From contig NC_087251.1 of NCBI RefSeq assembly GCF_037042905.1, positions 39,742,001 through 39,806,000 on the forward strand: DNA of 64,000 nucleotides, read 5' to 3'. Under the pieces are notes generated by a model, which had not been told where the DNA came from, did no database searches, and saw nothing but the letters and a program-made list of their open reading frames with translations. Position numbers and translations under genes: made by a program. Source of the stretch: Lytechinus pictus. Its lineage: Eukaryota. Positions 4,202 to 27,257 of this stretch are shown piece after piece (the first letter of the stretch is position 1; every line of letters begins with the position of its first letter).

Positions 4202-6576
4202 AGTTAAGGGCATGATGGGGGGTGGGGTAACGTCGATCTCCCAAAATAGATGTAGCGGTCACTTTATAGGCTTGTAAAGGAGCACATTTGCCGCGGAGGG
4301 GACCCCATTTCTGTTCCAAAGCATAGCAATTTTTATCTCATTGAGAAAAAAGAACAAAGATCGAGATCCGTTCCAATTAAAGCATAGCATTTTCTTCTTA
4401 TCGAGAAAAAAAAAGAAAGAAATCCGCTCCAAAGTTCGCATATTTTTCTTTACGCCAATCTGGCCGCATTGATCCGCTACGATGAGCTGCATTTTTGGTG
4501 AAAAGCGGCCCGGCGCAGAGCGCTGGATGACCATCTGTAGTTCTGAAGCCTGTTCCGAGGACCCTCCTTTAAGCCCGCTCCAATAAAAGCCCCCATTTTT
4601 TTGTATCGCCCGCGGCACATACCTAGCTACCACTTTTGTGGTAGAGTGCCCCGGGAGTGCCCCCCATGGGTGTTCCCCAAAACTCAAAAGCGAGAGAGCA
4701 AAGCGAAGGAACTTGTCATGGGGGCAATTTTGCATTTTCTAAAGTGAATTGGCCTTATCGTGATATTAAGTCACACACACTTTTGGTGAATTTGGTGATA
4801 AAAACTTAGTCAACATTGCATGTAGGCCCTCATTTTTCAAAATTTTAGGGGGCAACTGCGCCACTCGCCCACCCCTCCACCCCGCATACGGCTTATGATT
4901 TAAGTAACTTATGATTGAACATTGACTGACTTAAATGCTAATTGACTGAGTTCACTCAAGCCATTACTATAGGCTCTTCGGGAAGTGTTTTTCCGACAAT
5001 GCTATGCCAGTGTATGAATTATCTTTTGTTAGGCATACTTAAAGCCCCCAGTACGAAATCACCATGCAAACAGTACAGCAAATTCTCAATTGGTCTTCAG
5101 GACGTACTAGTCGGCGTACAAGTACTATGCCTTAGTTTCTTTGGTTCAGTGAAATTTGATTTGGAGGGAAAAGGCAGGAGCTTGCAGTCGCGTGTAGTTC
5201 TGATGTCGGTCTGGGTCTCCTCAGCTGTTGGCACAACTAGGCTGTGTACATATATGTAAGCCAATAATATTCCTAAAACGTTTTTGGTACTTGTCAAACC
5301 TCTATTATTATGAAGCAAAACGGGCCCGTAATCTGAAAATTTGTCATAACAATAACGCAGTTCTTGCATAGAGCATTTCACATTATGATATAAACGTCCC
5401 TATATGCGCCCGGTTGGTTGGTGTTGGAGTTAGGTTGGCGCTCTTCAATCTAGTACATTATCTGCGCCTTAATTGGATTCAGGACTTGGATATTTGTAAT
5501 ATCTACTAAAAAATGTTTTGTTTTTTTCATGGTAGAGAGTTGACATGATATACGTACAATCAGGAAAAGTTTGTTTCATGTGAACTCAGTAGCGTCCCTG
5601 GTAATTGTTTTTATCTATTCATTTCTTTTTTACAAGCAATAGGGCCTACAGAGAGTTCAACACCATTCTACTCATGGATGAACAGGCTGCATGGTCAAGT
5701 AATAATAACAGGCTGGTGTCTCTGTCATTTCCATCATTAAGAATAAATTATTCTCGACCTCGTCCAAAATTACGGGGAGAGGATCAGTCCCCCTGATTCA
5801 AGTTTTCTTTAGGCCGGGGCTACCTGCCAACCTGCTCCTCCACAGTAAAACACTTTGAATTTTTATGCACGTTAATTGTTTAAACCCGTCGTTCTGACAG
5901 CTATTGTTGAAACTTTTAAAAGTTATTATTGTAGACAACTTGTTAAAAATTCTAATTAGTTTTAAACTTTTAAACAATCGTTTAAAATGTTTAAAAGAAC
6001 TTGTTTAAAAGTTTAAACAATAGTTTTGAATAATGGGCTAAAACGTGCGTAAAAGTTTAAACAGTGTTTTTGCAGTGATTTCTTTTGCGATCAATGACAT
6101 CAACCGAAAGGAACCCAACTGGAATTTAGTCTTCTATGCTTTTCACACTGCATATATTTTCCTTAACCCCGGCAAATTGGTGGGGCTAAGGGGGTCTTAG
6201 CCCCACCAATTTCCCGGGGTTAAGCTAAATTAGCTCACTTCGGTTTCACACTACGTTTTAGAAAAGTGAGCTAGCACGGTAAATAGTACGGTACCATCTG
6301 GCCCTGCAAAAAGCAGCGTTAGCAGGCTTATATGCTTTTCACACTGCATTTCCTAAACCCAATACTATTTGCTTAGCTGGGGTCACGCCTTAACCCCCGC
6401 GCTCGCATCATTTGGTTAGTGAAATACGTATGGTCTTAGTGAATTCCTAAAAACAAGCCTTAAGAATGCCCCTCTTCAGGTATGAATTTCCTAAATTTTC
6501 AGCTCGCGCTTCGCGCTCGCAATATTTGATTAGTGAGATGCGTATGTTAATCATGATAACAATGACTACAAGTGCT

Positions 6577-9241
6577 ATTTGGTCTGCTGAAATTATCGAG
6601 GGTAATACTTTTTTTAGTTTGCTATTATTTTTGCTAAAAAGTTTGTAGTCAGTATTTAAAAGAGAAAGGGGTCGCAATTGTTTTAGTTGTGTTGTGACCT
6701 TCCGAGACTTAGGGATCAAAGTTATAATGCCTCGTCTCATAGAAGAGCAAAGTTCAACATCACTATAGCATTTGTTAAACAGTTTACATAAAATATCCTT
6801 ATGCTCATTCCAATAGCATTTGTAAAAGTTGGCAGTAAGTCCATCTGACCCAGGGGTCTTATCGTTTGGCGTTGACACCAGCGCTTCAAAACATTCAATT
6901 TCTGTAATAGCGCATACAAACCATAGCTAAGTCTTCTTCAAAAATAGATAAGTTCAGTTCTTTGTCCCAAAATTCATTGTTGCTTAAAGCAGTGTCGTTT
7001 GACTTGTATAATCTTTCATATAATTTTTTTTGAAAAGGGAGATATATAGGAGAAAATGTTCGTTTATTATTATAGATATGTTGGAATATTGTAAGGAAAA
7101 TAAACGACCTGGATTAGCTTTTTCAATTTATTTTGAAAAAGCCTTTGACTCCATCGAATGGAATTTTTTATTTAAATGCCTCGAAAAATTTGGGTTTAAA
7201 CAAGCCTGAGTTAGATGGATTCGAACTTAATATAATAAAATTAAAAGCTGTGTTCTAAATAATTGATATTCTCCCCCGGTTTTTTATATTGAGAGAGGGG
7301 TAAGGCAGGGGTGCCAACTCTCCCCATATCTTTTTCTAATAGGGGCCGAAATTTTAGGGACATTGATAAGACAATCTACAGAGATACAAGGGATTCAGGT
7401 TGGAAAAAAAGAAATACGATTAAGCCAATACGAAGATGATACAATCATATACTTATCAACTACGGAGAAATATCTTGAAAATTGTTGTTCCATCCTAACT
7501 TATTTTGGAAATATATCAGGTTTAAACATAAACATTGAGAAGAGTAACGTAATACGGCTAGATGGTGTTAAAATAATAATTTCAAAGAAAGTAAAGTTAA
7601 ATGGGTAAAAGACGCATTCTCTTATCTAGGAATGAAGATACCTGTTTCTGATGAATTGGACATATATCATTTCAATTTCGATGATGAAATACAACAGGCT
7701 GACAATCTACTGAAAGTATGGAACATGAGAACGTTATCATTAGCTGGGAAGATAACTGTCATCAAATCTCTAATAATTCCAAAATTTGTGTATTTATTTA
7801 GTATTATTCCAAATCCACCAAAATAGTTTTTTATTCTCTCCAAAGTAAACTTTTTCGATTTATTTGGAGTAATAAGAAAGATCGTATAAAAAGAAAAATA
7901 TTGTATAACGATATATGTGATGGTGGTTTGAAAATGATTCATACAGAAACTTTTTGTCAGGCACTGAAAATAGCTTGGGTCAAAAGAATTTTAGACAAAG
8001 AAAACGAAGGTAACTGGAAGACTTTGTTTTATATACATATGAATAAGATAGGTGGTCATTATATTTAACAATGTAACTTTACAGGTAAAGACTTGGATAA
8101 ACGCATGAATAATTTCTGGAAAGATGTTTTAACTTCATGGTCTCATTACAGATACTTCAACCCAGTTAAATATAAAGATATCTTAAATCAATCATTGTGG
8201 AATAACTCTTATATTAAAATAGACGGTAAAACGATATTTATAGAACAATGGTTTGAAGCAGGTATTTTATATGTAAAAGATATTATAAAGAATAATGGAC
8301 TATTTAAAACTTTTCATGAACTTCAAGACGACTTTAATCTACCTAAAAAGTGTTATTTATAATTTTTTTAATTGATTTCTTGTTTGAAAAAAGAATGGAA
8401 AAATACTTTAAGATCAAGTGTTACAAATGATGAATCTGACGATGTAAATAGTTTAAAGAGATTTATAAGTTATAAGAAGGTGACGAAATCCTGCTATTTA
8501 AAACTTAAATAAAACCATTGTTTAAATATATCAGAAACCAAGCAGTGTGAAAAATGGTCTGATGATCTAAATGTAGGTCTATAAGTCTTTTGATCCAGTG
8601 GCAAAATAGATTTTTGACTATTTATTGGGTTACCTTGGATTCAAAATCAGAATGTTCCAATATAAGTTTATTCACCGTCGTATATCAACTAATGAGTACT
8701 TATTTAAGATAGGTGTGAAGAATTCACCATTGTGTATTTTTTGGAAAACTGAACTACAAACTTTGATACACTTATTCTGTTTATGCCCTATTGTTTCTAA
8801 ATTTTGGACGGATGTAAATATTTGGTTGAATTTCCACAATATAAGTTGTCACAAATTTTCAAATATTGATATATGTTTTGGTGTTCCAAGTGAGTTTCAA
8901 CATCTCTCAAACACAATAATTTTATTTGCAAAATACTTCATTTTCAGAACAAAATGTCAAGAAGGACAACTTTCGTTATCTTTATTCATGAATGAGTTGA
9001 AATTTGTTGAAAATGTTGAAAAGTTTATTGCTTTTAAAAAGGGCAAGGAGGTGCTACATTATAAAAAAATTGAGACCTTTTACTAATTTTGAACTAAGGT
9101 GAGACTTGCTTTTACTTGTTATGTATTTAATGATGTACTTTATCTTCATTACGTTGAATATTGATGTATCTTGTTGTACACGATGAATATTCTACATATA
9201 TTTTGTTTATTGAAGCAATAAGGATTCAAAAAAGAAAAAAA
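6577..9241 (+). mobile_element. L1/Tx1-clade LINE, 5'-truncated, with inverted 5' segment; degenerate ORF2
   Basis: Minus strand 6577-~7031 encodes TPGSDGL..RGIITLIPK..RPLSLLNTDYK..IISADQ; plus strand from ~7034 continues KGRYIGENVR..FEKAFDSIEW..GVRQG..LSQYEDD..CIF..HLFCLC; poly(A) at ~9228-9243; TSD aatgactacaagtgct at 6561-6576 and 9242-9257; many stops and frameshifts. Confidence 0.92.
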
Positions 9242-10234
9242 AATGACTACAAGTGCTTCACGTGTTTAGATGTAATTGTAACAAAATCAGCAAGTGCTTG
9301 GCACTAGCATTAGATGAATATGATGAAATATGTATACTCTTAATGGATTCCTAAAATGGATCAATATTATACAAAAAGTCCAGCTCGCGCTTCGCGCTCG
9401 CATTGTTTGTTTAGCGAGACAGGTACGTATCCTGAATACAAAAATTTGCTTATAATGTCCTTCTTTAGGTCTGAATATAAAAAAATTTCAGCTCGCGCTT
9501 CGCGCTCGCATTATTTCATCAGTGAGATACATATCCGTGTCCGTGTAATGGCACTGTCCTTAAAAATGTCTCTATTAGGTCAGTATACCTGCAACGAAGT
9601 GACACAAGTTTTTGCTGGTGCCCCCCCCCCCCCATGCCGTGATCCACGGTACAACACTGAAAAGACAATTTTCTTGAAAGACCGCTGAAAGACTCTTTTG
9701 AACCGTTTCAAAAAGTTTTGGGACTCACGAGGACCATAAGACCATTGAAAGAGCCATCAGGAATCGTGAAAGAACTCGAAGATCTTTGAAAGTTACAGCA
9801 GTCTTTCAGAGGTATTGCTCTCTGTGGAATGGGGGTTTCACAGACACGCACAAGGTCAATACACATACAGCGGTCACTGACAGACGGCGAAACACATCGG
9901 ATGCTAACAAAGTGTACCACGTGATCTGGATGCATTCCTTATTTGTAGATGCTCGTCTCTCGCACGCTCCCACTGATAACAACACGCCGCACCTATAAAC
10001 GCTTCAAATCCCGCGATTGGTATTCCAGTTATAAGCATGTTCAAATGCTATATCAGTCTGAAGTAAACAAATTTATTTTGGGTGGGATTTAGATTATCGT
10101 GATCAATGTTTGTTATGAAACAGCAATGAACTTTTGAGTTATGTTGCGCCCTCGCAACTCATCTGTTATAAGGCAAAACAAGATATTCCATTCTATATAA
10201 CACCGCAATTGAAATAGCGTGGGCTTGCACATCT

Positions 10235-10510
10235 GGGCACCGTCTTACAAAGAGTTGCGGTTGATCCAATCAATTGCAAAACTATGGAAAGCCAGCAAAG
10301 TCAACATTTAAAATGCATGCTTATTTAATTTTTTTTCTAGATATGAATGCATATCCGTATAAATTCATTGATTTCTTGACAATTTGGTGTGTTCTCCTTT
10401 GTTAACAAAGCACATTTTTCAAATTTCCTGAAGAAAAATTATGACACTGATTGATTTCCATAGAACTACGATGGATTGGATCAATCGTAATTCTCTGTAA
10501 GACGGGGCCC
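10235..10510. mobile_element. MITE, GGGCCC-terminus family (second copy at 13472-13780)
   Basis: TIR gggcaccgtcttacaaaagagttgcggttgatccaatc / gattggatcaatcgtaattctctgtaagacggggccc; internal sequence shared with 13472-13780. Confidence 0.85.
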
Positions 10511-10942
10511 TGCACTACAGAATGGCATATAGCATTTCAATCTGGTCTTGCTCAGATGATTGCAGAGTTTAAAAGTGCATGCATCCAAGTTGCTTACTGA
10601 ACATGCTGAATAAATAATGATTGGATTCCCATATTTTTAACATGACAGGGTTATGCCCGTCACAAATCAAGCCCCCAATCTAATTTCTGGAATGAAAGCA
10701 AAGGTCTATGGTTATTTTTATGATTGGGTGGCGGCGAGCCAGGACCGAGGGACGTGACCAAATTGCATTTCCAAAGATAATTCCTTCTCATTCCCCCATG
10801 CTAGGGGCCTGTGATTATTTATGAGCAGAAATAAACCTTCACGATGACAGATTGAAACTTTGGCGGCAAAAGCATGGTCGTATTATAGGGAGTCCCTGGG
10901 TCATTATCGTCTGCTCACGATGCTGAATGCCAGAGGGTCTGG

Positions 10943-10949
10943 TATAAAA
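10943..10949 (+). promoter_or_regulatory. candidate TATA box for the 11323-20523 gene
   Basis: ggTATAAAAg in a locally GC-richer stretch ~380 bp before the ATG; CCAAT/ATTGG motifs at ~10675 and ~10723. Confidence 0.45.
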
Positions 10950-11322
10950 GCACCTCCACGTCTTCCCCCGATAGCAAAGCGATTCCACTCGGGCTGTACA
11001 ACACATGACTGGGGTATATAAGATATTATAACTCCCCTGGTGTACTATCTACCCAACTATCGCCCTCCGACACGGATGGTCTCTTAAAACATACATGGTC
11101 CCCGATACAGTTAGCCCTCCGGGATATAACTCCGATGTTGCAATATACCAAGTCTACATCTAACCCACAGTCTCCCATACACACATTCATCATGTATTCG
11201 TCACCGCTTCAAGAATTCACATACAAATCCACGGACACACACTGCCATCATCCCATCAACGCCACAGCTATCCACAGAAGTAGTGGAAGAAACTTTTCAG
11301 GACAAATTCTCTCGAAGTTGAC

Positions 11323-11543
11323 ATGAAAATGCCGGAACAGGAACAGCAAGAGGAACAACCAGAAATGGAGGCTTGCATGAGCTACCTGGCGCGGCGCAAG
11401 CCGCGGAAATTTTTGATGGATTTTAGTTATTTGGACATGATTTGGTCTGAGGACACAAAGCTAATTATACGAGCCGGTGATTATCCACCAGTTGTAATAG
11501 ACTCTCCAAGTCGCCTGGTATCGATGGGCCAATTCGAAAAAGG
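11323..11543 (+). CDS. uncharacterised protein with meteorin-like CUB-type domain, exon 1 of 3
   Basis: MKMPEQEQQEEQ...SMGQFEK-GG|GTAAAT phase-2 donor; in-frame TAG upstream at 11281. Confidence 0.7.
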
Positions 11544-13311
11544 GTAAATACACAATTTCTGATCTATTTTATAATATTTGTTTTATATAAAGATGTGATC
11601 ATTGTGTCTGCAAAAAGTTATGTTGTAAAGTTATTTCTTGTTAAGTATTAAAGAATTGAGAACAGCATCGAATTAAATTAATGTTTGGCAGCCATGCCTG
11701 CTCTATTCTACTGACAGCGTCTGGTTGCTTCAATGCATAGACCTAATTAATATGACATTGGCTAAGTTCAAACGGTCTTGGCGTATGAAGTCATGAACTT
11801 AAGTGAACTATTTTAAGTTTAATGACAAGGACTGGAAAACATACCACTCACTATTGCGCCAGTACATTTCCTTTGGATGCCACATACATTGAACAATATT
11901 TTCCCATAATTATGATTATGAAATATCATGAAGAAACCATGTGAAATTATGAATATGCCTCAATTTGTTGTAAATAACATTGATATTTACAAAATGTCAT
12001 GTTCTTGTAATAACAACTGAATCAGATATACAAAGTGAAGGAGTCCTAAAATTTTAGTGGTATTTTCTTTTGTAATTCATACGACTTCTGAAAAAACAAT
12101 ATGTTGCTATTCATCAATAATGATTTGGGGAAATTTACTTTAAGCATTAAAACGATTGTGTGTGTGTGTGTGTTTGTATACCCTTCATTTTCACAATAAT
12201 CTGTTACAAGTTGTATGAAACATAATTATTGTCATTATAGTTTACGCATTTTTTTCGTGGATTTTAAGGATGAAATCAAATCTGAGCAATATTGCCACTA
12301 AAATGAATATTAAGAAAGTGTGTAAGGGACTGATGCGACATATTTGTGTTTTTATGTTGTACCATGAAATGTAATACTATTGTTTGCTTTTGTTTATTTG
12401 ACGTTTAAGTCTCATTAATTTGTATGTTCATCGTTAGCAAAAATCACAAAATCAAAACCGAGTTGCGATGCCAATTGTTGAATGCATGGTTCGACCTGCA
12501 GTTTTATGAAAAACATAAACAATCATAAATTCAATGTCATGAAAACTTGTACAATTGTCGAATGTAGCGTTAATAATCCAATACCTAAATACATTCACAA
12601 AGCCTTTAATTGTCATGAATTGTCTCAGACATCAACTGACCAAAAAATCTAACAACTGCCTTTATTGTACTTCTTATGTTATCATAAAAGCTTTCAATAA
12701 AATTATTCATCATTAGGCTGCATGCATCCAATTGAAATAACTACAATAACAAACCATTTTGTAACTATAACCTCAACTGAAACATCAAAGTATAATTAAA
12801 TTCTCACATTTGTTTCTCATATTCGAATTCTATATTGAAAAAACATTCAGCCATGCCCAAGGCTATATAATTTTTTGGTTGCATTTGACTAGAATACAGT
12901 CTTTTATGACGAGAATATAGTAAGATCGTGACTAGACAGAACGTTGATAATATATATTATATCAGTATACAGCACCCAACTGGTTCGTAATCTAGTCATT
13001 TAGTTTGCTCTTAGAGTGTATAACGCGATGTGAACAGATGATAAAATGCATAATTTCAATTGTTTTAGATATATATTGCATACTTCGACACGTTGACCTC
13101 TATATCATGTATTATCATCTCCCCGTTGGTCACGCCGGTGATGCATGACAGATTGAGATCATGTGATTTGATAGCTGTCCCGTCTAGTAAAACAAATACA
13201 AAACACGTACTTTTGATTATTTTAGACTTTTGTTGCATCTGTCGACGAATCACTATTGCATCACCGAGTATAATACCCTCTTTCTATCTCCCTTTTGGTC
13301 ACGTGATGCAG

Positions 13312-13431
13312 TGGATTTAGATCATGTGATACATGTGAATTGAAGGCTGACCGAGGCTACCTACTATGGACCAATCCAAGGGGATCGATCGAAGTCAGGT
13401 TTAAATATGGAACACAAGGAGATGACTTCAG
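13312..13431 (+). CDS. uncharacterised meteorin-like protein, exon 2 of 3 (absent from ORF track)
   Basis: Pyrimidine tract + CAG acceptor at 13311, 120 nt open (GFRSCDTCELKADRGYLLWTNPRGSIEVRFKYGTQGDDF), strong donor AG|GTGAGT; phase 2-2 matches both neighbours. Confidence 0.75.
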
Positions 13432-13471
13432 GTGAGTAAGAGAGAGAGAGAGAGAGAGAGTTCAAATATCA

Positions 13472-13780
13472 GGGCCCCATCATACAAAGAGTTACAATTG
13501 ATCCAATCAATCGTAACTATGGAAAACCAGCAAAGTCAACGTATAAATACATGTTTGTTATAAAAAAAATTCTAGATATGTATATCCATAAATTCATTGA
13601 TTTCTTGACAATTTGGTGTGTTCTCCTTTGTTTACAAAGGACATTTTGCAAATTTCTTGTAGAAAAATGTTTACAAAGGACATTTTGCAAATTTCTTGTA
13701 GAAAAAAAAGTATGACACCGATGGATTTCCATTGAGTTACGATTGATTGGATCAATCGTAACTCTTTGTAAGATGGGGCC
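13472..13780. mobile_element. MITE, GGGCCC-terminus family
   Basis: TIR ggccccatcatacaaagagttac / gtaactctttgtaagatggggcc; internal ~40-bp tandem duplication; homologous to 10235-10510. Confidence 0.85.
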
Positions 13781-14261
13781 CTGGGAAGCTCTGGGAAAGT
13801 GTGTTCACACTGTGGTCACATTGTGGACTACGTCAATTATGATTTGCACTGTTAAAATGCTTGAATTTATTAGTGTGAAGACATTTCCATCACTTTGAGG
13901 GCACCTCTACAGTGTGAATGTTCACAGTGGGCGATGTAGAAATGTGATCCACACTTTGAAAATGCTCGAATTGAATAGTGTGACGATGATTTCACACTGT
14001 GAACACACCGAGACTTAGTTCCACTGTGTGACACTGTAATCTTTCCGGTAGGGATGGCTCTTATTCTAAAATGATGGTACTTGGAAGATAGAAAGGACAT
14101 CTTATCACCCTCAACATTCCAACTTCCATGATGCTCAAGGAGCCTCATAGTGTGAAATCATCTTCACATTGTTGAATTTTAGCATTTTAACAATGTGGAT
14201 TACTTTTCCAATATGTAGTCCAATAACACAATGTAGAGGTGTCCACAGTCCAATATAGCTT

Positions 14262-16770
14262 TCAGGAAAATGAAAAAGGATATTGGTAATTTAGAACTCG
14301 AAAGGAAATTTAAACAATTGCGAAATGTGGTACAAAGAAAAGTGAGGAAAGCTAAAGACGAATTTTTCCAAAATCAAATTGAAGACAATAAACATGATTC
14401 TAGGAAATTATGGAAGAATCTCAAAGAGTTAGGTTTAAAAAACAAACAAAAAAATATTCAGAAAAGTGTTATTAATATTGAAGGGGAATTATGTCATGAT
14501 AATCTAAAGATAGCCAACGAATTCAACAATTATTTTACAACAGTGGCCGATAAATTAGCCTGTGAGCTCCCCATTACGGACAGAAGTGAGTTTGGGGCCG
14601 ACAGTCCTAATTCAAAAAAACTATACGACAATAAAGGTATACAAAGAGGCTGTTTTAATTTTTCTCCTGTCACAGAAAAGTTTGTATTAGATGAATTATC
14701 CAAGTTGAAAATATCAAAAAGTACCGGACTTGACTTGGTTCCTGCTAGATTTTTAAAGGATGGTGCAAAAAAACGTCTTTATACCTTTAACTTACATTAT
14801 TAACCTATCTATTTCAACTTGTACCTTCCCTGATGAAATGAAAATCGCTAAAGTCACACCACTACACAAAAAGAAAGACAAAACTCACGTTGGCAATTAT
14901 AGACCTATTAGTGTGTTAAGCATAGCGTCGAAAATTTTGGAGAAATGCGTGTATTCTCAAATTGAGAAATACTTTAAAGAATACAAAATCATTTATGAAT
15001 TTCAGTCTGGTTTTAGGAATGGTTATTCTACTGAAACATGTTTAATTCACTTGTTGGATTTTGTTAGGAATGAAATTTCCGAAGGCCGTTATGTTGGCAT
15101 GGTTCTTCTTGACTTACAAAAAGCATTCGATACGGTTAATCATGAAATACTCTTAAAAAAATTAGAAGTGATGGGTTTGAATTCAGCATGCTTGAATTGG
15201 TTTAGGTCTTACTTGACCAATCGCCGTCAAATGGTATCCATGCAAAATGTACTTTCATATTCTATGCCTATAAAGTGTGGAGTTCCACAGGGGAGCATAT
15301 TAGGTCCCATTCTTTTTATGTGCTATATCAATGATATGTGTATTCGTGTTAATGAAAGTAAATTACTTTTATATGCAGACGACAGTGTTTTACTCTATTC
15401 TGATACAAGTCCTAAGCTGATCGGTGAAAAACTTAGCTTAGAATTATCAAATTGTGTTAAATGGATGATAGATAACAAGCTTAGCTTACATGTTGGTAAG
15501 ACTGAAAGTATTTTGTTTTGTTCGCGGGGTAAGTCTAAGCATACAGATGATTTCAATATATACTATAACAATCAATTATTTAAGAGACAGAATTCCGTGA
15601 AGTATTTAGGCCTGATATTAAATAGTGATCTCTCATGTACATCCATGGTTGACTCTATTGTCAAAAAAGCTAATGCTCGCTTGAAATTTCTATACCGGTA
15701 CCAAAATTGCATGAATACGAAATCCAGGCGCATTTTAAGCTTTTCGTTAATACAGTGTTTATTTGATTATGCTAATGCAGCATGGTACTGCAGTCTTGGA
15801 AAGGTTGATCAAAAAAAGTTTATAATTATTCAAAATAAGATTATTAGATTTATTACTTGCTTACACCCAAGAACACATGTTGGGAAGAATGAAATCGAAA
15901 AAGCTGGCCTTCTTCCCATAGACTTGAGGTCGCAACAACTTATACTTCACCATGTTCATAAAATTTTCTATTCAAACGAATATCATTACATATCAAAAAA
16001 TTTTACACGGTCATCTAATATTCACGGGCATGAAACAAGAAATAGTCTGTTTAACTTTGTTGTACCTATGAGAAAAGGTCAAATTGGTAACACATTTTAT
16101 TATAAAGGTATACATTTTTGGAATTCCCTCCCTAATCATGTTAAATCGGTTAAGACTTTTTCACAATTTAAAAGAGTATTGAAACAACACTTAAAAAATG
16201 TCCCCACTCTGTAATGTTAAATAGTGTAGTCTTATATATAACTATTTAGATATGATTTTTTTTTAATCAACTTGTTTTACATTGTTTCATCATCTTTTGT
16301 TGTTTGTGTGAAAGTTTGATGTCAAACTTATTTGTACTTTTTCATATCTTAGGTTTTACGATTCATGAATCTTGTATTAGTTACGATGCATTTACCGCTA
16401 CCTAAAAATTGATTATTAGTATAATTCTCATATGTAACTTAGAAGTAATGATCGTTTACTCAACCTGTTTTACAATTATTTTAATCGTATTTTGTTGACT
16501 GCGTGTTTTTCATGGCAAACTTATTTGCTTTTGTCTTTTTATATATTAAGTTTTACAATTCATCGTGTTAATTTAGTGGTCTAGACTTAATTGACGTAGT
16601 TTGTAGATTTCTATAGGTGTTTTTCATAGATGTACATTGTCTTCAATTACTGATGTAAGGACCCCATTGGAAATAAGCCATCTCGGCTTTCATGGGTTAT
16701 CCTGTCAAGGTATACACTTCTGTTCATATTTTCTTGTACTTGTTCATAGTTACCTGACAAATAAATCAAA
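14262..16770 (+). mobile_element. CR1/L2-group LINE, 5'-truncated, RT domain nearly intact
   Basis: KSTGLD, GNYRPIS, QSGFR, LDLQKAFDTV, GVPQGSILGP, LYADD, VKYLG, WNSLP motifs; single frameshift in an A7 run at ~14767-14773; 3' UTR with stem-loop and aaataaatcaaa tail. Confidence 0.93.
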
Positions 16771-16834
16771 ATTATATTCATGTTATTCATTTTGAGCATT
16801 TATGCAGTGTGACTGACATATTCACAGAGTGAGC

Positions 16835-17482
16835 AGACTGTGAACACACCATGTCCACTATGTGGACTCATTGTGAATTTACCATGTCCACTATGTGAAC
16901 ACATTGTAAACATACCACATCCACTATGTGAACACATTGTGAATATACCATGTCCACTGTGTGATCACACTGTGAACACACCACATCCACTATGTGAACA
17001 CATTGTGAACACATTGTAAATATACCGTGTCCACTGTGTGAATACACTGTGAACGCACTATGTCCAAGTATGTGAACACACTGTGAACACACCACATCCA
17101 CTATGTGAACACATTGTGAACACACCATATCCACTATGTGAACACATTGTAAATATACCATGTCCACTGTGTGAATACACTGTGAACGCACTATGTCCAC
17201 TATGTGAACACACTGTGAACACACCACATCCACTATGTGAACACATTGTGAATATACCATGTCCACTTTGTGAACACACTGTGAACACACCACATCCACT
17301 ATGTGAACACATTGTGAATATACCATGTCCACTTTGTGAACACACTGTGAACACACCACATCCACTTTGTGAACACATTGTGAATATACCATGTCCACTA
17401 TGTGAATACATTGTAAACACACCAGTGCATCCACTATGTGAACACACCACATCCACTATGTGAACACATTGTGAACACACCA
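16835..17482. repeat. minisatellite, ~33-bp unit (ccactatgtgaacacattgtgaacacaccacat), itself built of ~11-bp subunits
   Basis: Roughly 19 tandem variant copies; explains the three Cys/His-rich repetitive ORFs in the track. Confidence 0.95.
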
Positions 17483-17494
17483 TTTCTACAACCA

Positions 17495-17775
17495 GTTCGT
17501 CTAATATCCAATTCCTCTTATTCCTTTAATATTGTCATATGGTCTAATGACCGGTTGGTCTAATTTACACTTGGTCTAATTTCCGTTTAGTCTAATTTCC
17601 ACTTGGTCTAATATCCAATTGGTCTAATGACCACTTGGTCTAATAGCCAAATGGTCTTTTGACCAGCTGGGCTAATCGTCAATTGGTCTTATTTTCATTT
17701 CGTCTAATTGTCATATGGTCTAAATGATCGTTTGGTCTAATTCACACTTGGTCTAATGTTCATGTAGTTTAATAT
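17495..17775. repeat. degenerate tandem array of ttggtctaat (~17-bp period)
   Basis: More than 10 copies of (t)ggtctaa; related remnant at ~43480-43640. Confidence 0.8.
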
Positions 17776-18004
17776 AAAATCACTCATTATGATTTATTTG
17801 ATCTACAATTAACAAATATGGTCATGGATAAATAAATACACCATGCATCAAGACATGTCGCCAGGAACCGGAGGGGTAGAACTGCGACTTCCACTGGTAT
17901 AGAAACATGCATTGGTTTCATTTGTTTCAATTATTGTATAATGTTATGCAAATGAAACTAAGAAGTAGTAGGTACAATACATAAATTTGCTTTGTGAGAT
18001 GTTA

Positions 18005-18172
18005 CACTTTAAAAAATGAAGTGCTATAATTTAGCACTTACAGTGCTTGTATAGTGACTGCACTACGAGTGCTGATTTTCTAGTTTGAATTTGAACTAGA
18101 AAATCAGCACTAGTAGTGCAGTCACTATACAAGCACTGTAAGTGCTAAATTAGCACTTCAATTTTTACAGTG
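18005..18172. mobile_element. foldback MITE with CAC...GTG termini flanked by TA
   Basis: ~80-bp arms, nearly perfect palindrome centred near 18090. Confidence 0.85.
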
Positions 18173-18591
18173 TACTCATGACAAACAGAAAATGCAATAT
18201 ATATTTTAATGTAATATTTATATAATAATCGACAAGGGGGGCAAAAAACGGATAAAGTTTGGAATTCGCCGTCTAAAATGTTTTAAGCATGATGACGACA
18301 CATATATGAAAATAACCTCTGCAATCTACTGCTGATGGTAACATAGTGATTGCCCTTCATACGACTTCGCAATGGAATTTGTTTTGATTGTGTGGCCCTG
18401 GGCGCGAAACCAAATTCTTACACAAGGATATAAATACACCGGCTATTGCGTGGTCGTATAATGTCAAAAGCAATTTATGATGACCATACTCTGTTCTGTT
18501 GTTTTAGGATTTGTGTCATAGAATGATTAGTTGTGGCACAGAAGACAGTCGAGCAGAAGAGGAGGGGGAGGCGGGGGAGTTAGCTCATTAA

Positions 18592-18752
18592 TACCTTGGT
18601 CACATTTGCCCTACGGCGGCCGTACGGCGAGTCAAAAACAGCCGTTTTGTTAATTTCAATTCAAATCACCTATATGCAGCTGGTACAAAAATGTTAAAAC
18701 GGCTGTTTTCAACTCGCCGTACGGCCGCCGTAGAGCAAATGTGACCAAGGTA
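18592..18752. mobile_element. MITE with ~58-bp TIRs
   Basis: taccttggtcacatttgccctacggcggccgtacggcgagt... / ...actcgccgtacggccgccgtagagcaaatgtgaccaaggta. Confidence 0.85.
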
Positions 18753-20264
18753 TAAAGCACACATAAAAGCTTTTCAAATGTCTTGTATATAATATTTTCG
18801 CACTAAGAATGCACATACCCGGCACATACTAAAAGAAAGTTCGATCATTCAGTCACCAAGCATTATAAAAAGGTGCTGTTACCAATTTCAAAGTTGCAAA
18901 GTTGAAAGTTTGGGAAGTTACAATTTGCATTCAATTTAGACCTAGACATTTCATATACTTTTACATCTGCGCACCCTTTTCAAGTTGAAATACGAGTATA
19001 TTATTTGCTATTGTATTTGAGGTGCAATGTTGCACTTTCATTTCTTCTGGAAGTAACAACAGAACAAAATGAACAATATTGCAGAACTCGCATTTGATAA
19101 CATTTTTTTTTCATGTCACTTAAACAAAGTTCTTATTTTTGCAAACACACACACATACACCAAATTTCTGAGCAATATTTTTTATATGAAGAATGTGTTC
19201 GATGGAATAATTAGAAATATCTTGACATATTCGACAATACTTCTATTTAGATTAAACTGTATGTGATTAAGGTATATACTACATTATTGGTATAAATTAG
19301 AAGCAATTGACAATAGACTGTAGACACCTGATAACCTTACCGACGTTTTTTTTTTCTTCTGAAATGGGATATTATTAATTGTCAACCATTGTCAAGGGAC
19401 TAGGTTCGTTCAGTATCATGACATCTGAAGCTGCCACCCGAACCAGAAGCTGGGGATGATTGTCTTCACGACTCTGACGATAACATTCATATAGTTTACT
19501 ACCCTATAATATATCACATGATTGTAATTCTGTAATACCGGGTGGGATCAACATATTTTGCTGTCTGGGACGGTACGTGAAGACGCGAGATAATAATTCC
19601 TCCTATATGCATGGCAGAAAGATGACTAGGTTGTTTGTTGGAAACGTTTAATGTGAATATGAATGGCCCGTCGTTTTGGAAGAGGGGAAAGGGGGGGGGG
19701 GGTGTGAACTTGAAAAAAAAGGTTGCCATTGCTGGAGGACCAGAGTGATCTATAGTGCACTCCAAAAAAAAAGAACGCACACGATTTTTGAAATATCTTT
19801 TCAGACAATTTTTCCCCAATATATACCACGGCTGTAATACTATATTTTTTCTTTGATGAAACTCATTTTTTTTTTTTTGGGGGGGGGAGGTGAGGTAGTA
19901 ATCACGAGTTCACGACCATTTATAGAAAACTTTGTTGTCCTGATACAACGAAGACAGTTATTGTTATACAGATATCATGATCATCTTCTTTTGTATGGTT
20001 GTCAATAAAATACGTGGTCCGCAGATAACATATTTTCAATAAATTTGCTATTTCAGGATTTTAGAGGCAAATGCGATTTTAATTATTCAGTAATGATTTG
20101 AAGTTTTAGAGTAAGATTTTTAATCTATATTTTATCTATTCATTCCCGAACATTGTTAATGGCCACGTTCTCATTTTGCTTGACCAAAACTTCTTTTTCC
20201 CTTTCTCTTTATGTTTTATTGATATCGGTTATGGTCTTCTCTCTCTCTCTCTCTCTCTGTACAG

Positions 20265-20523
20265 TTGTTACATCGACCCCCAGCACCAAGGGGTAAGGAT
20301 ATACGAAAACCGAGGCTTCAAGAAGACCCAAATCATTGATGGAAAAAAGCCAATTTCGGGGAGCGTGGACCCCCACCACATCAAGACCCCGGTGCGTCCA
20401 GGAGAAAATAACTTCGAATTCCGCTCTCTGAGCGGAGAGGTCCGACTGGAATTTGAAGTCATTCGCGATCCAGACTTTCCCAAACCGAAGGCTTTTAAGT
20501 TCAATTACGTTCTCGCGCTGTGA
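20265..20523 (+). CDS. uncharacterised meteorin-like protein, exon 3 of 3
   Basis: (CT)n tract + ACAG acceptor, phase 2, GC-rich codons CYIDPQHQGVRIYEN...AFKFNYVLAL then TGA; total CDS 221+120+259=600 nt. Confidence 0.78.
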
Positions 20524-21270
20524 TTTTGACGTTGATACCTTACGACGCTAATGACACAGGCGACGTGTTTAATGGCCAGGAATTCGAGCCTTGAAGACGC
20601 CAAGGGTTCAAAAGTGACCCTGCTGCTTTAGTCATCTGCTGTGAAAATATTCGTTGCCTCTTCGTGAATTAGGTGTTTGGGATAATTATTGGAGAAGTGT
20701 TGGTGTGGAGTAATTTTTGTCGCTTGTTTCTGATTTTGTTTAATTGTAAGAGGTTGGGTGTTGGCAGGAGACCTGATCATCCAATATAAAATCGTTCTAA
20801 ATACAGAAGGCTATAGCGTCAGGAGCGTCTGATGGTGCGCCGAGTTTTACATGCAGTCAGCTCGGAGTTGACATTCCAATGTACCCAAGATCAATCTTTT
20901 ATGCAACAATTTCAAAACAAACAACTATGATTTGCTGTAAGACAAGGGGACATATTCAGAGATAAATGAATGATGATGCGTCAGAACATGAATATGTAAA
21001 TATCTGCAGCCCGGAGTATCCCTTTAAGTGAACGAAAAACACTCCTTGTGTTATTTCAGTAATAGGGGTATATACCAAACTATCTGTTTTCAATATTTTC
21101 CTTTTTCTATTTCTCTTTCTTCTCAACATTTTCTTCTCTTTATCTCATTGAAAATTGTAATTTTTCCCCGACATTAGTGTCGAATTGAGCCAGCTAGCCG
21201 TTGATCTGGGATCCTGATAACATCGACATTAAGATTTACGATGGTTCATGAAAGCAAATTAACACCTCCA

Positions 21271-21457
21271 GGGGCCCTTTCATAAAACACGGTTTGTAAG
21301 TTTAAAGTGGCTTTAAGAACAACTGGTGATCTTTTCTTGTGGTAAATGATTAAAATGTTCACTGGTGAATATTTAGCGTGCAAGAAAGGTAGAAAGGTTC
21401 GCCATTCGTTCTTAAAGTCTTTCTTAAATTACGAACAGCTTTATGAAACACCCACCA
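21271..21457. mobile_element. MITE (tttcataaa TIR family; relatives at 39349-39520 and 42434-42967)
   Basis: gggccctttcataaaa ... tttatgaaacacccacc termini. Confidence 0.7.
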
Positions 21458-22517
21458 GAGCAGATATCCTTGTACCCTGCCTGGCGCACACTAGGTAGTG
21501 TAAATGTTCCGTCATACACATATACTCCCCATAGAATCTGAATAATATCATAAAACCAGGGTGGCGCATTACATGCGCAGAAGCACTATCCGAGCACTGC
21601 TCGGCGAGCAGCCGTTCATCAAGCTACCCAAATCTCCCTGACGCATTGCGTGCCGTCACGAGTCAGCCTCGGACTCTCGATCTCAGTTTAAGCATGGACC
21701 TACACATGGTTTAAGTATATCAAACTAGAATGTAACGCACAAGCTCGCAAAAGTTTATTGAAAAAAGTATTACTTAGATTTCAATTTTAAATGTCTGCCC
21801 ATTATAAGAGAGATGGGTACATCAAATTATACTTTTAGTTACGTGTAACAATATTTTGTTCTCTTTATGTGTGACCACTGTGATATGCAATGTTACTTTT
21901 ATGTTAATCACAATTTTTGATGTATATAAAACGAGTCTCATCATGGAAATTGCGACAGCTTTCCAACGTATCGTGACACATTATTTCGTGGCTTTCAATC
22001 ACGTGCGTTACGGCGTTCTGTTCTTATATGCGTTCCAAGTGCGTTCCATCGCCGATCGATGATGAAGTATCTTCAATATTTCGTCAAGTTTCATTGTAAA
22101 CTGTGCACGGTCTAACTGGTCGGGTCTCCTCAATACGATGTAGTATTGATTCTAATTAATTATCATAATACCTGAGCTTATAGCAGATCTATAGCACTTG
22201 AAAGGTATCCAAGTCAATCAAATGAAATAGTTTTGCCTTTATGGTTCTGAAACAGTATCCCCGAAGCAGCTGTGTATAGGCCTAAATCCAATCAATCAAT
22301 TACTAGTAGGTTATCGTCTTAGATAAGCCCTAGAGTTTCAAAAACAAAGTTGTTTTGAAATAGCAACATTCCCGAATCGGTATGAACTTACTTTTTCTAC
22401 TGTTGAAAATGGCTATATATATTTCAAAATTAGTTTTGTAATTGTTTGTATTGCTGTTGTTGTTCTACGAATACAGTCTGTGGAAATATTTGCTTATACT
22501 TTGTTGTAAATAGGGCA

Positions 22518-23216: not shown

Positions 23217-23849
23217 GGGCATTGATGTACTAACAACTAACAAATAGATTTTATAAACAAAATGAACTTATGCAGCCTTAACTTTTAGTAGAACCCCTTC
23301 CAAATCACATGAAAAGGCGAACACGTATTTATTACCAAATTTTGCATAGTATAGGCGCCTTTTATAAATGTCTATTACATGTGACTAAACTATGGAGTGG
23401 CTTTATACAGCTCCCTAACTTTAGGTATTTTTTTTTTTTATTAAAAGGCAAATGCAATATGCATAGTCAAACATTTTGGGGGTGATATTCAACATTCAAA
23501 TTTCATCAAATTTCCTTTCAATTTAAAATAGGTCCTCGGAAAAATAGATAAATCTTATTTTACTTTTATTTTGATGATACTAATAAATTACTTACAAGTA
23601 ATGATTGAATGAGAAATTAAATCATCCGATACTACCAAGTACATTTTGTTCGTGACGTGTATCCACTTTCTTTTAATTGAATAGGAATACTAAAGATTTA
23701 TATAGATGTCACCAATAACATTATTTTGAAGTATAAACGTGGCAAAGGATGAGTTTTATCATCAATGAGAAGTCGTCAGAAAATTGCAAGATTTCGTCAA
23801 AGCGAAGAAAGAAATAGGAAAATCAATGTATTGGCTTTTGTATGTAAAT

Positions 23850-24126
23850 AGTAAGATTAAATGAGAACTTACCGTTTAAAGTTTGATCTTTATTTTATGA
23901 ATATTTAGGAGTAGGCCTAAGTTATTACTTAGAGATCCCACCCGCGCATGCGCAGTCAATATTCAAAGCTCCATATGTGGCTGCGAACGATATAATGTAG
24001 TAAGAAATAGAACTTACACTACAGTTTGAAATTTGGGTGGATGAGGAGGGCACGTAATTACTTCCTCCTAAATATTCATAAAATAAAGATCAAACTTCAA
24101 ACGGTAAGTTCTCGTTTAATCTTACT
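23850..24126. mobile_element. MITE with ~62-bp TIRs
   Basis: agtaagattaaatgagaacttaccgttt... / ...aaacggtaagttctcgtttaatcttact. Confidence 0.85.
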
Positions 24127-24904
24127 ATTAATTTCATATTTCCTCGATCGTTATTACATGAGATTTTGAAGGCAAGTAGCCACATTTGGGAGAAAAAAAC
24201 ACCAGCATGTATGTGAGCACTAATAAAGAAAGAGTTCTCTTTCTCACGAAGTGGGCTTGTTCTCTCATAAATAATGTTTGACATAAATTATCTAACAACG
24301 CACAGTCTCCTGTCAGGGGGCTATGCTCCCTTGCAGTTTAAATTCAGATTGGGTAGGTTTACTTTGTTTCAACGGTTCATCCATGGAGGGTCTTTCTACC
24401 TCCATGCATGGTTCGACACAAATCCCCCTTTCAGGGTCTCTTCAATACATGTAAAGTTTGCACTCTTTGAGCAAACGGGGCGTTTCATTTTTAGCCTAAT
24501 CACAAAATAGTGAGAATATATTTGGTCACATGATGCTATATAAACCAATCAGCATACATTGATTTAATTTATATAGGATGTAAAATACATTATTCATTTA
24601 ATACATGTTTTGCCTTAGCTAGTTTTATAAGATAAGTATAAACAAGTTTACCACTTTAAGATTGTAGTTTATTACATTTTGAAAATTACATGTTCATTAT
24701 GAGAAATGGTGCTTTTGATAGGATTAAAATTTTCGAAAATAAGTTTTTGTTGTTTTGTGCTTTCTTTCTTCGGAAATGAGTTGACTTTGTGCATTAATTT
24801 TTTAAAAGCTAAATTGAGTTGTATAATTATACGTATGAGTTTTTAAAATGTATTTTGTAGAATTACACAGAGTAAATCTTATATTATTTCGTTCTCATCT
24901 GATA

Positions 24905-25690
24905 CTAACCAGATACGCCTTAAAGTACCCTCTCCTTATTCCCAAACCAAAAACGGAAATCATGAAAAAGTCCTTTCAATATTATGGTCCGTTCCTCTGG
25001 AATAAGCTTCCCTCTAATCTTAGAAATTCAACATCCCTTAAAGTATTCAAAACTAAATTTAAATTCTTTCGGCTGAAGCCTTAGTTTTAGACCCCACTAG
25101 GATCGTTTTTTTTTTTACTTTGCATGTATACGTTTCCTAATCTTATTTCTATGTCCTTTGTAAAATATGTATATGTTCTTTTTATCGTTGCAGGGCCTCT
25201 TTGTAAATCAGTTCTATAATTGAAAGTGCTACCCTGCGTAAATAAAACTGAAATAAATAAAAAAAAAATGAATAAATATTTGGCATATTATTAATTGTAA
25301 AATTCGTAATTGCTCCAAAATATCTCTCTGAATTAATCCAGGCATACACTCCCAGTAGGTCCCTTCGTTCTGCAAATCAACATTTCTTAACTGTCAAAAA
25401 AGCAAAAACTATATATTTTTTTTGGGGGGGTGATAGGTACTTTTCAAGCTCTGCCCCACGTCTTTTGAATACTCTTCCAGCTTCCCTTCGTTGTATTCCA
25501 AATATAACATTGTTTAGATCCAATTTAAAGATCTCATGAAGAAAGCATATTCAACATAGCCCCATTTACAGTTTTCTCAATATTTTTAAATGTTTTTGTT
25601 ATATAATTTCTATTTCACTTTTGTTTGTATATCTCATTATGTTCTACATTGAAGAGCGCTTTGATATGGATTTCATGAAAAGCGCTATAC
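24905..25690 (+). mobile_element. two adjacent 3' fragments of CR1/L2-group LINEs
   Basis: IPKPKTEIMKKSFQYYGPFLWNKLP..FKTK plus 3' UTR and A-rich tail to ~25268; second fragment YTPSRSLRS..SAPRL ending in agcgctttga...agcgctata. Confidence 0.75.
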
Positions 25691-26805: not shown

Positions 26806-27257
26806 NNNNNNNNNNNNNNNNNNNNNNNNNNNNNNNNNNNNNNNNNNNNNNNNNNNNNNNNNNNNNNNNNNNNNNNNNNNNNNNNNNNNNNNNNNNNNNN
26901 NNNNNNNNNNNNNNNNNNNNNNNNNNNNNNNNNNNNNNNNNNNNNNNNNNNNNNNNNNNNNNNNNNNNNNNNNNNNNNNNNNNNNNNNNNNNNNNNNNNN
27001 NNNNTCCGTCTTCCTTCTTTTTTTTCCCTTCTGTCNNNNNNNNNNNNNNNNNNNNNNNNNNNNNNNNNNNNNNNNNNNNNNNNNNNNNNNNNNNNNNNNN
27101 NNNNNNNNNNNNNNNNNNNNNNNNNNNNNNNNNNNNNNNNNNNNNNNNNNNNNNNNNNNNNNNNNNNNNNNNNNNNNNNNNNNNNNNNNNNNNNNNNNNN
27201 NNNNNNNNNNNNNNNNNNNNNNNNNNNNNNNNNNNNNNNNNNNNNNNNNNNNNNNNN
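26806..27257. other. assembly gaps / N runs (26806-27004 and 27036-27257)
   Basis: runs of n. Confidence 1.

What the first reader, a model, noticed from the sequence alone, without database searches (positions are those of the whole stretch)
11323..20523. Hidden 3-exon gene encoding an apparently non-secreted, stand-alone meteorin-type CUB-like domain
Seen: exons 11323-11543, 13312-13431 and 20265-20523 have canonical splice sites, matching phase-2 junctions and join into a 199-aa ORF; the middle exon is invisible in the ORF track. By-eye comparison with METRN/METRNL recalled from memory gives five colinear blocks: LKADRGYLLWTNPRGSIEVRF vs LRCAAGAVEWMYPTGALIVNL; CYIDP..QGVRIYENRG vs VCIRS..SGANIYLEKTG; IIDG vs LVPDG; FRSLSGEVRLEFE vs FGLEQGGLFVE; FKFNYVL vs GFQYEL. 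Known meteorins are secreted, disulfide-bonded and carry a C-terminal NTR domain. This protein has an acidic Q/E N-terminus with no hydrophobic signal, stops right after the domain, lacks several expected Cys positions and has a CxxC (CDTC). Inference: an undescribed intracellular offshoot, or ancestral relative, of the meteorin fold.
Basis: partly seen in the sequence, partly recalled or inferred. Interest (0 to 1): 0.85.

Follow-up and report, generated by a model that had tools for sequence, protein, structure and literature searches.

The report
Non-secreted invertebrate relative of meteorin
A small, strongly conserved sea-urchin gene encodes a protein without a secretion signal that consists of little more than the CUB-like domain known from the chordate cytokines meteorin and meteorin-like, which indicates that this domain already existed, apparently inside cells, in bilaterian animals before meteorins arose.

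Summary
The three exons join with GT-AG sites and phase-2 junctions into a 199-aa ORF. S. purpuratus has the same three-exon gene, annotated 'uncharacterized LOC100889549' (95% identical protein, dN/dS 0.07).

The family occurs in echinoderms, a hemichordate, a nemertean, a brachiopod, molluscs, an acoel and flukes. The domain is always C-terminal. No member has a Pfam hit or a name.

The meteorin reading is supported by four separate lines:
- AlphaFold models rank the murine meteorin N-terminal CUB domain (7TL6) first in all five PDB searches. For the domain-only model Z is 14.1 (rmsd 2.1 Å, 113 of 118 residues) against 8.3 for the next CUB.
- Profile-profile alignment gives P 0.0024 and beats 200 of 200 shuffles.
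- Five family genes and both meteorin paralogues carry a phase-2 intron in the same codon of a shared W-x-G-x-G motif.
- Meteorins are reported only from chordates, and no named chordate member of this family was found.

None of 19 family proteins has a signal peptide or membrane segment, there is no NTR domain, and one of meteorin's four CUB cysteines is conserved.

Caveats: the CxxC is not conserved, the sampled reads did not show the exon 1-exon 2 junction, and the function is inferred.

The parts
10510..11322 (+). Conserved upstream block, probably promoter and 5'UTR. TATA-like sites lie near 10943 and 11017.
   Evidence: 81% identical to S. purpuratus over 1059 columns that include exon 1. 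The last 150 nt before the ATG are 91% identical. Read directly. No transcript start was mapped.
11323..11543 (+). Exon 1, coding part: residues 1-73 plus 2 nt of Gly74. It encodes an acidic N-terminus, three short beta strands and the 'SPSRLVSMG' strand motif.
   Evidence: It is 91.4% identical to S. purpuratus with dN/dS 0.13. The region is conserved in starfish, crinoid and hemichordate proteins. RNA-labelled runs hold it, but the four runs laid did not cover it.
11544..13311 (+). Intron 1, phase 2, in the codon of Gly74. This is the position shared with meteorin genes.
   Evidence: with the hhalign alignment.
13312..13431 (+). Exon 2: residues 74-114, GFRSCDTCELKADRGYLLWTNPRGSIEVRFKYGTQGDDFS. 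It holds the most conserved core.
   Evidence: An RNA contig match starts exactly at 13312, and 7 + 2 raw reads cover the exon. The exon is 117-120 nt in all five family genes mapped.
13432..20264 (+). Intron 2, phase 2, in the codon just before the invariant Cys115. It contains a LINE remnant and a minisatellite.
20265..20523 (+). Exon 3, coding part: residues 114-199 and the stop. It encodes the C-terminal two thirds of the beta sandwich, and the protein ends right after the last strand (FKFNYVLAL).
20524..20822 (+). Probable 3'UTR, conserved with S. purpuratus.
   Evidence: The alignable block 20262-20822 is 81% identical.

Best explanation
This is a real gene under strong purifying selection, the orthologue of S. 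purpuratus LOC100889549. Its product is a small soluble protein that stays inside the cell. It consists of one CUB-type beta sandwich that shares ancestry with the N-terminal domain of the chordate cytokines meteorin and meteorin-like (Pfam Meteorin_N, PDB 7TL6).

The family is old and occurs in Ambulacraria, Spiralia and an acoel. It differs from meteorins in four ways:
- it has no signal peptide;
- it has no C-terminal NTR domain;
- only one of the four conserved cysteines of the meteorin CUB part is conserved in it;
- outside echinoderms and the hemichordate, the domain is the C-terminal end of a long, charged, disordered protein.

Inferred mechanism, not shown: the sandwich is a binding module for a protein or other ligand in the cytosol or nucleus, and the variable or alternative first exon supplies the context.

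Inferred history: meteorins arose in the chordate stem from such a gene. The exon upstream of the shared phase-2 intron was exchanged for one encoding a signal peptide, NTR-coding exons were added downstream, and disulfides were gained or kept.
For: Shown:
- Gene model and selection.
- Family range and lack of annotation. No Pfam match. The precomputed Pfam column is empty for the family but lists PF27640 for meteorins.
- Fold, urchin model (pLDDT 78): 7TL6 is first by Foldseek (E 1.9e-3), by the VIA second look (Z 7.4) and by VIA wide (Z 7.3).
- Fold, Tubulanus domain-only model (pLDDT 86, pTM 0.82): 7TL6 is first by Foldseek (E 1.3e-7, TM 0.63/0.73, next hit 6.4e-5). By VIA wide it has Z 14.1, rmsd 2.1 Å over 113 of 118 residues, against 8.3 for the next hit, the Kremen CUB. 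The model alignments contained no meteorin.
- Sequence: hhalign of 13 diverse family domains against 32 METRN and METRNL CUB parts scores 24.8, P 0.0024, over 73 colinear columns. None of 200 column or block shuffles reaches it; the highest is 21.4.
- Gene structure: a phase-2 intron lies in the codon after R-W-x-G in brachiopod, nemertean, bivalve and chiton genes and at the aligned Gly74 in sea urchin. Guppy METRN and gar METRNL have a phase-2 intron in the codon after S-W-R-G.
- No N-terminal hydrophobic region and no membrane-like segment in 19 family proteins, against all 8 meteorins checked.
- The literature states that meteorins were found in vertebrates, amphioxus and tunicates but not in other invertebrates (PMC12316458).
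Against: - The sequence signal is weak: hhalign probability is 12%. It vanishes with the echinoderm-heavy alignment (P 0.63) and in the C-terminal half alone (P 0.2).
- Both structures compared with 7TL6 are predictions.
- Absence of a signal peptide was judged by hydropathy, not by a trained predictor, and localisation is untested.
- The four RNA runs laid cover exon 2 but not exon 1. In those samples another 5' exon, which I could not find, may be used.
- Absence from chordates rests on named hits only; several hit fragments have no taxon.
- Function is pure inference. No member has been studied.
Confidence: 0.8

Rival explanations
1. It is a generic CUB-like or jelly-roll beta sandwich. The resemblance to meteorin is convergent or reflects only the common CUB fold, with no specific shared ancestry with Meteorin_N.
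For: With the urchin model the margin was small: Z 7.3-7.4 for 7TL6 against 6.6-7.0 for the RetS sensor domain and a Banna virus protein. hhalign probability is only 12%, and the C-terminal half shows no signal. PDB sequence searches do not find meteorin.
Against: The better model separates meteorin from all other CUBs by about 6 Z units and by about 500-fold in Foldseek E-value. The shared W-x-G-x-G motif carries a phase-2 intron in the same codon in both families. My own rough estimate is that about 2 in 220 nucleotide positions of the aligned stretch would give such a match by chance. None of 200 shuffles reaches the profile score.
Confidence: 0.08
2. It is an ordinary secreted protein after all. 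The true first exon, encoding a signal peptide, is missing from the model, or the protein leaves the cell by an unconventional route.
For: The RNA runs laid show exon 2 joined to something other than exon 1, so an unseen 5' exon exists in some transcripts. CUB domains are almost always extracellular. Two spiralian members keep a Cys near the place of meteorin's fourth CUB cysteine (read by eye).
Against: NCBI models in eight or more species from five phyla all start without a hydrophobic segment. The alternative first exons of three starfish and a crinoid are acidic or polar rather than hydrophobic. Only one Cys is conserved, so no disulfide framework exists. The long N-terminal regions in Lingula, Argopecten and the acoel are charged, Ser/Arg-rich and coiled-coil-like. 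The candidate acceptor at 11300 is not conserved. No candidate upstream coding exon was found in 9000-13250.
Confidence: 0.07
3. It is a chance ORF, a pseudogene, or part of a larger neighbouring gene.
For: Expression is low in the runs sampled, and exon 1 was not covered.
Against: dN/dS is 0.07. The exon structure is identical in S. purpuratus. Orthologues exist across phyla. In S. purpuratus the flanking genes, Med29 and an ARMT1-like gene, lie on the other strand.
Confidence: 0.01

Closest known systems
Meteorin (METRN) and meteorin-like (METRNL): N-terminal domain, Pfam PF27640 Meteorin_N, PDB 7TL6
   Same: The fold matches best of anything in the PDB: Z 14.1, rmsd 2.1 Å over 113 of 118 residues. 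The conserved motifs are colinear: W-x-G-x-G, then L-x-L-x(3)-G-x-[LIV]-x-W-x-x-P-x-G, then C-[IL]-x-P-x(2-4)-G-[AV]-x-[IV]-[YF]. A phase-2 intron sits in the same codon.
   Different: The family has no signal peptide and no NTR domain. Only one of the four conserved cysteines of the meteorin CUB part is conserved, the one aligned with meteorin C82. The precomputed Pfam column shows no PF27640 hit for any family member. Named members are non-chordate bilaterians, whereas meteorins are chordate. The family has a second phase-2 intron before the conserved Cys that meteorins lack.
Canonical CUB domains (Pfam PF00431): spermadhesins, C1r/C1s/MASP, neuropilin, Kremen, cubilin
   Same: The same beta-sandwich fold. 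They fill most of ranks 2-25 with Z 7-8.3 and rmsd about 3 Å.
   Different: No Pfam CUB match even at E up to 10. No disulfides. Intracellular context. Clearly more distant than meteorin.
NCBI 'uncharacterized protein LOC100889549' (S. purpuratus) and its unnamed orthologues in Diadema, Patiria, Asterias, Acanthaster, Antedon, Saccoglossus, Tubulanus, Lingula, Argopecten, Liolophura, Convolutriloba and Opisthorchis/Clonorchis
   Same: This is the same gene family. The window's gene is the orthologue: 95% identical to the S. purpuratus protein, with the same exons.
   Different: Nothing essential differs. None of these has a name, a Pfam domain or a paper.

Membership tests
Meteorin family (METRN/METRNL) | N-terminal CUB-like domain of the Meteorin_N type (three-dimensional fold) | tested here: met
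   7TL6 ranks first in five searches. The best is Z 14.1, rmsd 2.1 Å, 113 of 118 residues, against 8.3 for the next hit. These are predicted models, not solved structures.
Meteorin family (METRN/METRNL) | Sequence-profile match to Meteorin_N | tested here: inconclusive
   hhalign gives P 0.0024 and probability 12%, and none of 200 shuffles reaches the score. The echinoderm-heavy alignment gives P 0.63. The precomputed Pfam column shows no PF27640 for the family. The local Pfam copy lacks PF27640.
Meteorin family (METRN/METRNL) | N-terminal signal peptide; secreted protein | tested here: not met
   The highest 10-residue hydropathy in the first 70 residues is at most 1.9 in 19 family proteins, against 2.2-3.2 in 8 meteorins. 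No membrane-like segment was found. This was a hydropathy scan only.
Meteorin family (METRN/METRNL) | C-terminal NTR (netrin-like) domain | tested here: not met
   The ORF stops directly after the last strand of the sandwich in every member. The CUB + NTR architecture of meteorins is taken from PMC11756984.
Meteorin family (METRN/METRNL) | Four conserved cysteines in the CUB part (C30, C51, C82, C118 in Pongo METRN numbering) | tested here: not met
   Only the Cys aligned with C82 is invariant in the family. The C30 and C51 positions hold Arg/Gly-type residues and Ala.
Meteorin family (METRN/METRNL) | Gene structure: phase-2 intron in the codon after S-W-R-G | tested here: met
   Guppy METRN and gar METRNL, compared with sea urchin, Lingula, Tubulanus, Argopecten and Liolophura.
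Canonical CUB domain (PF00431) | Match to the Pfam CUB profile | tested here: not met
   No Pfam family at E up to 10 for the window's protein, and none at E up to 1 for seven relatives.
Canonical CUB domain (PF00431) | CUB beta-sandwich fold | tested here: met
   Kremen, C1s, MASP, neuropilin, spermadhesin, cubilin and PCPE CUB domains score Z 7.2-8.3.
Canonical CUB domain (PF00431) | Extracellular location with two disulfides; Ca2+ site in many members | tested here: not met
   No signal peptide and a single conserved Cys. A Ca2+ site was not examined.
LOC100889549-like uncharacterised bilaterian family | Full-length, colinear similarity with the same exon structure | tested here: met
   95% identity without gaps to P0001. 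Exon sizes 221/120/259 in both species.

The most novel reading that the evidence does not exclude
The Meteorin_N domain did not originate with the chordate cytokines. It is an ancient bilaterian intracellular module. Meteorins were built from such a gene in the chordate stem in two steps. First, the exon upstream of the shared phase-2 intron was exchanged for a signal-peptide exon; starfish and a crinoid use alternative first exons at this intron today. Second, NTR-coding exons were appended. On this reading the invertebrate family is the closest living relative of the meteorin precursor, and its unknown intracellular partner could point to the ancestral biochemical activity of the meteorin CUB domain.
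Probability: 0.5. Interest if true: 0.8.

Novelty: new variant of a known kind. Interest (0 to 1): 0.72.

Why it matters
Meteorin and meteorin-like are much-studied secreted factors in glial differentiation, heart repair, metabolism and left-right patterning. Their evolutionary origin is unknown, and the literature states they are absent from non-chordate invertebrates (PMC12316458).

This family supplies a pre-chordate relative of their signature domain, and with it a concrete, testable scenario for how an intracellular module became a cytokine.

It also assigns a fold and a relationship to a conserved bilaterian protein family that currently has no name, no Pfam domain and no literature. It is one of the rare cases of a CUB-type domain without any secretion signal.

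Sea urchins and starfish are tractable for localisation and knock-down experiments, so the function can be tested directly.

Tried and rejected
- Pfam scans of the protein and seven relatives found nothing. The local Pfam copy lacks PF27640, so this says nothing about meteorin.
- PDB sequence searches gave only a marginal activin-receptor IIB match (E 0.05-0.1, three-finger fold). I treat it as a chance motif.
- The ESM Atlas feature search gave scores of 0.59 or less, which is uninformative. The Atlas fold search failed on the remote side.
- AlphaFold DB searches with the first, weaker model gave only weak, mixed beta-sandwich hits apart from the protein's own cluster.
- hhalign with the echinoderm-heavy alignment was not significant. 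The C-terminal half alone was not significant either.
- I looked for an alternative first exon like that of the starfish X2 isoforms, by tblastn and by scanning for ATG-started frames that end at a phase-2 donor. No convincing candidate turned up in 1-13311.
- The bacterial 1181-aa hit P0029 in the profile search is a repeat-driven false positive.
- Rfam found nothing in 9500-22000.
- Literature searches for the locus name, for 7TL6, and for meteorin together with echinoderm or mollusc terms found nothing relevant.
- Earlier notes of this scan do not mention meteorin.
All analyses used the database proteins those searches returned.


Full report
OBSERVATION

Exon 1 (11323-11543) starts at an ATG and ends AGG|gtaaat. 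Exon 2 (13312-13431) lies between tgcag| and CAG|gtgagt. Exon 3 (20265-20523) follows tacag| and ends in TGA. Joined, they give 600 nt and a 199-aa ORF with both junctions in phase 2.

IS IT A GENE?

A search of 5.8 billion proteins found a 199-aa NCBI protein of S. purpuratus, 'uncharacterized protein LOC100889549', that is 95% identical without gaps. It also found unnamed orthologues in Diadema, three starfish, the crinoid Antedon, the hemichordate Saccoglossus and the nemertean Tubulanus.

The S. purpuratus locus has the same exon sizes (221/120/259) and GT-AG sites. Between the two urchins the introns are essentially unalignable, and the alignable blocks begin and end at the exon borders. 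dN/dS is 0.07 at dS 0.45. Exon 1 alone gives 0.13 and exons 2+3 give 0.05. The gene is therefore real and under strong purifying selection. It is annotated in relatives, but as an uncharacterised protein.

TRANSCRIPTS

One call of read laying was allowed, on 10800-16700.
- A Logan contig of an RNA-labelled run matches 13312-13428 and stops exactly at the first base of exon 2, with 151 further letters that are not intron. This shows the acceptor in use.
- Seven reads in X21 and two in X22 cover exon 2, in the orientation expected for a + strand RNA.
- Exon 1 had zero depth in all four runs, and no 11543/13312 joint was listed. In those samples exon 2 is evidently joined to another 5' exon.
- Starfish and a crinoid have annotated X2 isoforms in which the first exon is replaced by an acidic or polar one, so alternative first exons are a feature of the family.
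- I could not find such an exon in the window.
- Exon 1 is held in full by other RNA-labelled runs of the same species and partly by runs of a related species. Its coding constraint and its conservation as far as hemichordates show that it is a functional coding exon.
- The 13431/20265 junction could not be tested, because intron 2 exceeds the 6-kb limit.

THE FAMILY

A profile search of 1.84 billion representatives found only 25 hits. The named ones add:
- Lingula (611 aa);
- the scallop Argopecten (442 aa);
- the chiton Liolophura (257 aa);
- the acoel Convolutriloba (765 aa);
- liver flukes (about 210-240 aa).

In all of them the conserved domain is the C-terminal 125-140 residues. It is preceded by long, charged, Ser/Arg-rich or coiled-coil-like sequence. 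No member has a Pfam match or a name from any source. No named hit is a chordate, although several fragments have no taxon.

FOLD

An AlphaFold2 model of the urchin protein (pLDDT 78, pTM 0.74) is all-beta. Three searches ranked the murine meteorin N-terminal CUB domain, 7TL6, first: Foldseek against the PDB, a VIA-align second look, and a VIA-align search of 48,161 chains that does not depend on Foldseek. The margins were small, however (E 1.9e-3; Z 7.4 and 7.3 against 6.6-7.0 for the next hits).

I therefore modelled the domain alone from Tubulanus, using a more diverse 12-sequence alignment that contains no meteorin (pLDDT 86, pTM 0.82). The match then became unambiguous.
- Foldseek gives E 1.3e-7 and TM 0.63/0.73, with the next hit at 6.4e-5.
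- VIA wide gives Z 14.1 and rmsd 2.1 Å over 113 of 118 residues. The Kremen CUB is next at 8.3, and a long list of canonical CUBs follows at 7-8.

The domain is a CUB sandwich, and specifically the meteorin kind.

SEQUENCE

The searches returned real METRN and METRNL proteins, 99% identical to the Pongo protein and 98% to the Pan protein. All carry the precomputed Pfam PF27640 Meteorin_N, and all of those listed are vertebrate. Only these returned proteins were used afterwards.

- With the echinoderm-heavy alignment, hhalign was not significant (P 0.63).
- With 13 diverse family domains against the CUB part of 17 METRN and 15 METRNL proteins, it scored 24.8 (P 0.0024, probability 12%) over 73 colinear columns.
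- None of 100 column shuffles and 100 block shuffles reached this score; the maximum was 21.4.
- The alignment pairs positions invariant in both families: W and G-x-G of the first strand, then L, G, W, P, G of the 'G-x-L-x-W-x-x-P-x-G' hairpin, then the Cys and the 'P…G-V-x-I-Y' strand.
- The C-terminal half aligns colinearly at low stringency but is not significant alone.

GENE STRUCTURE

I mapped exons exactly by requiring the spliced translation to equal the database protein.
- In Lingula, Tubulanus, Argopecten and Liolophura a phase-2 intron lies in the codon following R-W-x-G. In the urchins it lies in Gly74, which hhalign places at the same column.
- A second phase-2 intron lies in the codon before the invariant Cys. 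The exon between the two introns is 117-120 nt in all five genes.
- Guppy METRN and gar METRNL, paralogues that separated early in vertebrates, both have a phase-2 intron in the codon following C-S-W-R-G, the same codon of the same motif.
- By my own rough estimate, about 2 in 220 nucleotide positions of the aligned stretch would give such a coincidence by chance, and it does not depend on the residues.

NOT SECRETED, NOT A FULL METEORIN

- A hydropathy scan shows no N-terminal hydrophobic core and no membrane-like segment in 19 family proteins, including the alternative isoforms. All 8 meteorins checked have a clear signal-peptide core.
- The candidate acceptor 'ttttcag' at 11300, which could have brought in a signal-peptide exon, reads 'ttttccc' in S. 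purpuratus. The surrounding 150 nt are 91% identical.
- The proteins end right after the last strand, so there is no NTR domain.
- Of the four cysteines conserved in the meteorin CUB part, only the one aligned with C82 is invariant in the family.

INTERPRETATION

What is shown:
- the gene is conserved;
- its product has a meteorin-type CUB fold;
- the two families share a motif and an intron;
- classical secretion signals, the NTR domain and a disulfide framework are absent.

What is inferred:
- The domain works as an intracellular binding module. This fits its position at the end of disordered, charged proteins in most phyla.
- Chordate meteorins derive from such a gene by first-exon exchange at the shared phase-2 intron and by addition of NTR exons.

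The literature states that meteorins could not be found in invertebrates other than amphioxus and tunicates (PMC12316458). That gives the two families a complementary distribution. No paper mentions the locus or links meteorin to echinoderms or molluscs.

VERDICT

The result is a new, non-secreted, NTR-less variant of a known domain family, with an evolutionary implication that is testable.

Remaining weaknesses:
- the profile score is modest;
- the structural comparison relies on predicted models;
- the 5' end of the transcripts in this species is unresolved;
- there are no functional data at all.

Noticed in passing
window 13312-13431 versus 11323-11543: In the four RNA runs laid, exon 2 is covered (7 + 2 reads and one spliced contig) but exon 1 has zero depth and no exon 1-exon 2 joint. 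An unseen alternative 5' exon seems to be used in those samples. No candidate was found in 1-13311.
   Followed up: partly
window 14270-16214 (+), inside intron 2: Two overlapping ORFs of 177 and 484 aa have a reverse-transcriptase-like sequence (YADD motif), which suggests a non-LTR retrotransposon remnant. A 2.7-kb RNA-run contig matches 14252-15674.
   Followed up: no
window 16868-17483: A minisatellite gives long repetitive ORFs on both strands (units like CVHIVDVVCSQ), inside intron 2.
   Followed up: no
window 13558-13951: RNA depth is very high on both strands (50-65x in raw reads, huge Logan depth), with hundreds of loose ends and internal deletions. This looks like a dispersed, transcribed repeat just downstream of exon 2, not part of the gene.
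   Followed up: no
window 13432-13460 and 20238-20259: Intron 2 begins with a (GA)n run and ends with a (CT)n run. The first is masked by the read-laying tool and hides the exon 2 donor.
   Followed up: no
P0008-P0011 (Antedon, Asterias, Patiria, Acanthaster isoforms X2): The alternative first exons end in R-A-L-[IV]-x or G-R-L-S-V-S just before the shared intron. They therefore also supply an R-x-L-x-x strand like R-W-V-G-x, which suggests the first strand is needed whichever exon is used.
   Followed up: no
P0012 and P0019 (Tubulanus, Liolophura), loop after the conserved D-G: Both have 'P-R-C-S' at about the place where meteorins have 'P-R-V-R-C-F-S', the fourth CUB cysteine. This could be a remnant of an ancestral disulfide partner. 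Echinoderms lack it. Seen by eye only.
   Followed up: no
L001 (S. purpuratus) 1-1339 and 23805-28575; window 3417-3704: In S. purpuratus the neighbours are Med29 (upstream, - strand) and an ARMT1-like gene (downstream, - strand). A 75% identical island at window 3417-3704 aligns with L001 1095-1394, which overlaps the end of the Med29 gene, so synteny seems to be kept.
   Followed up: no
They might be further distant relatives, including one in a vertebrate.
   Followed up: no
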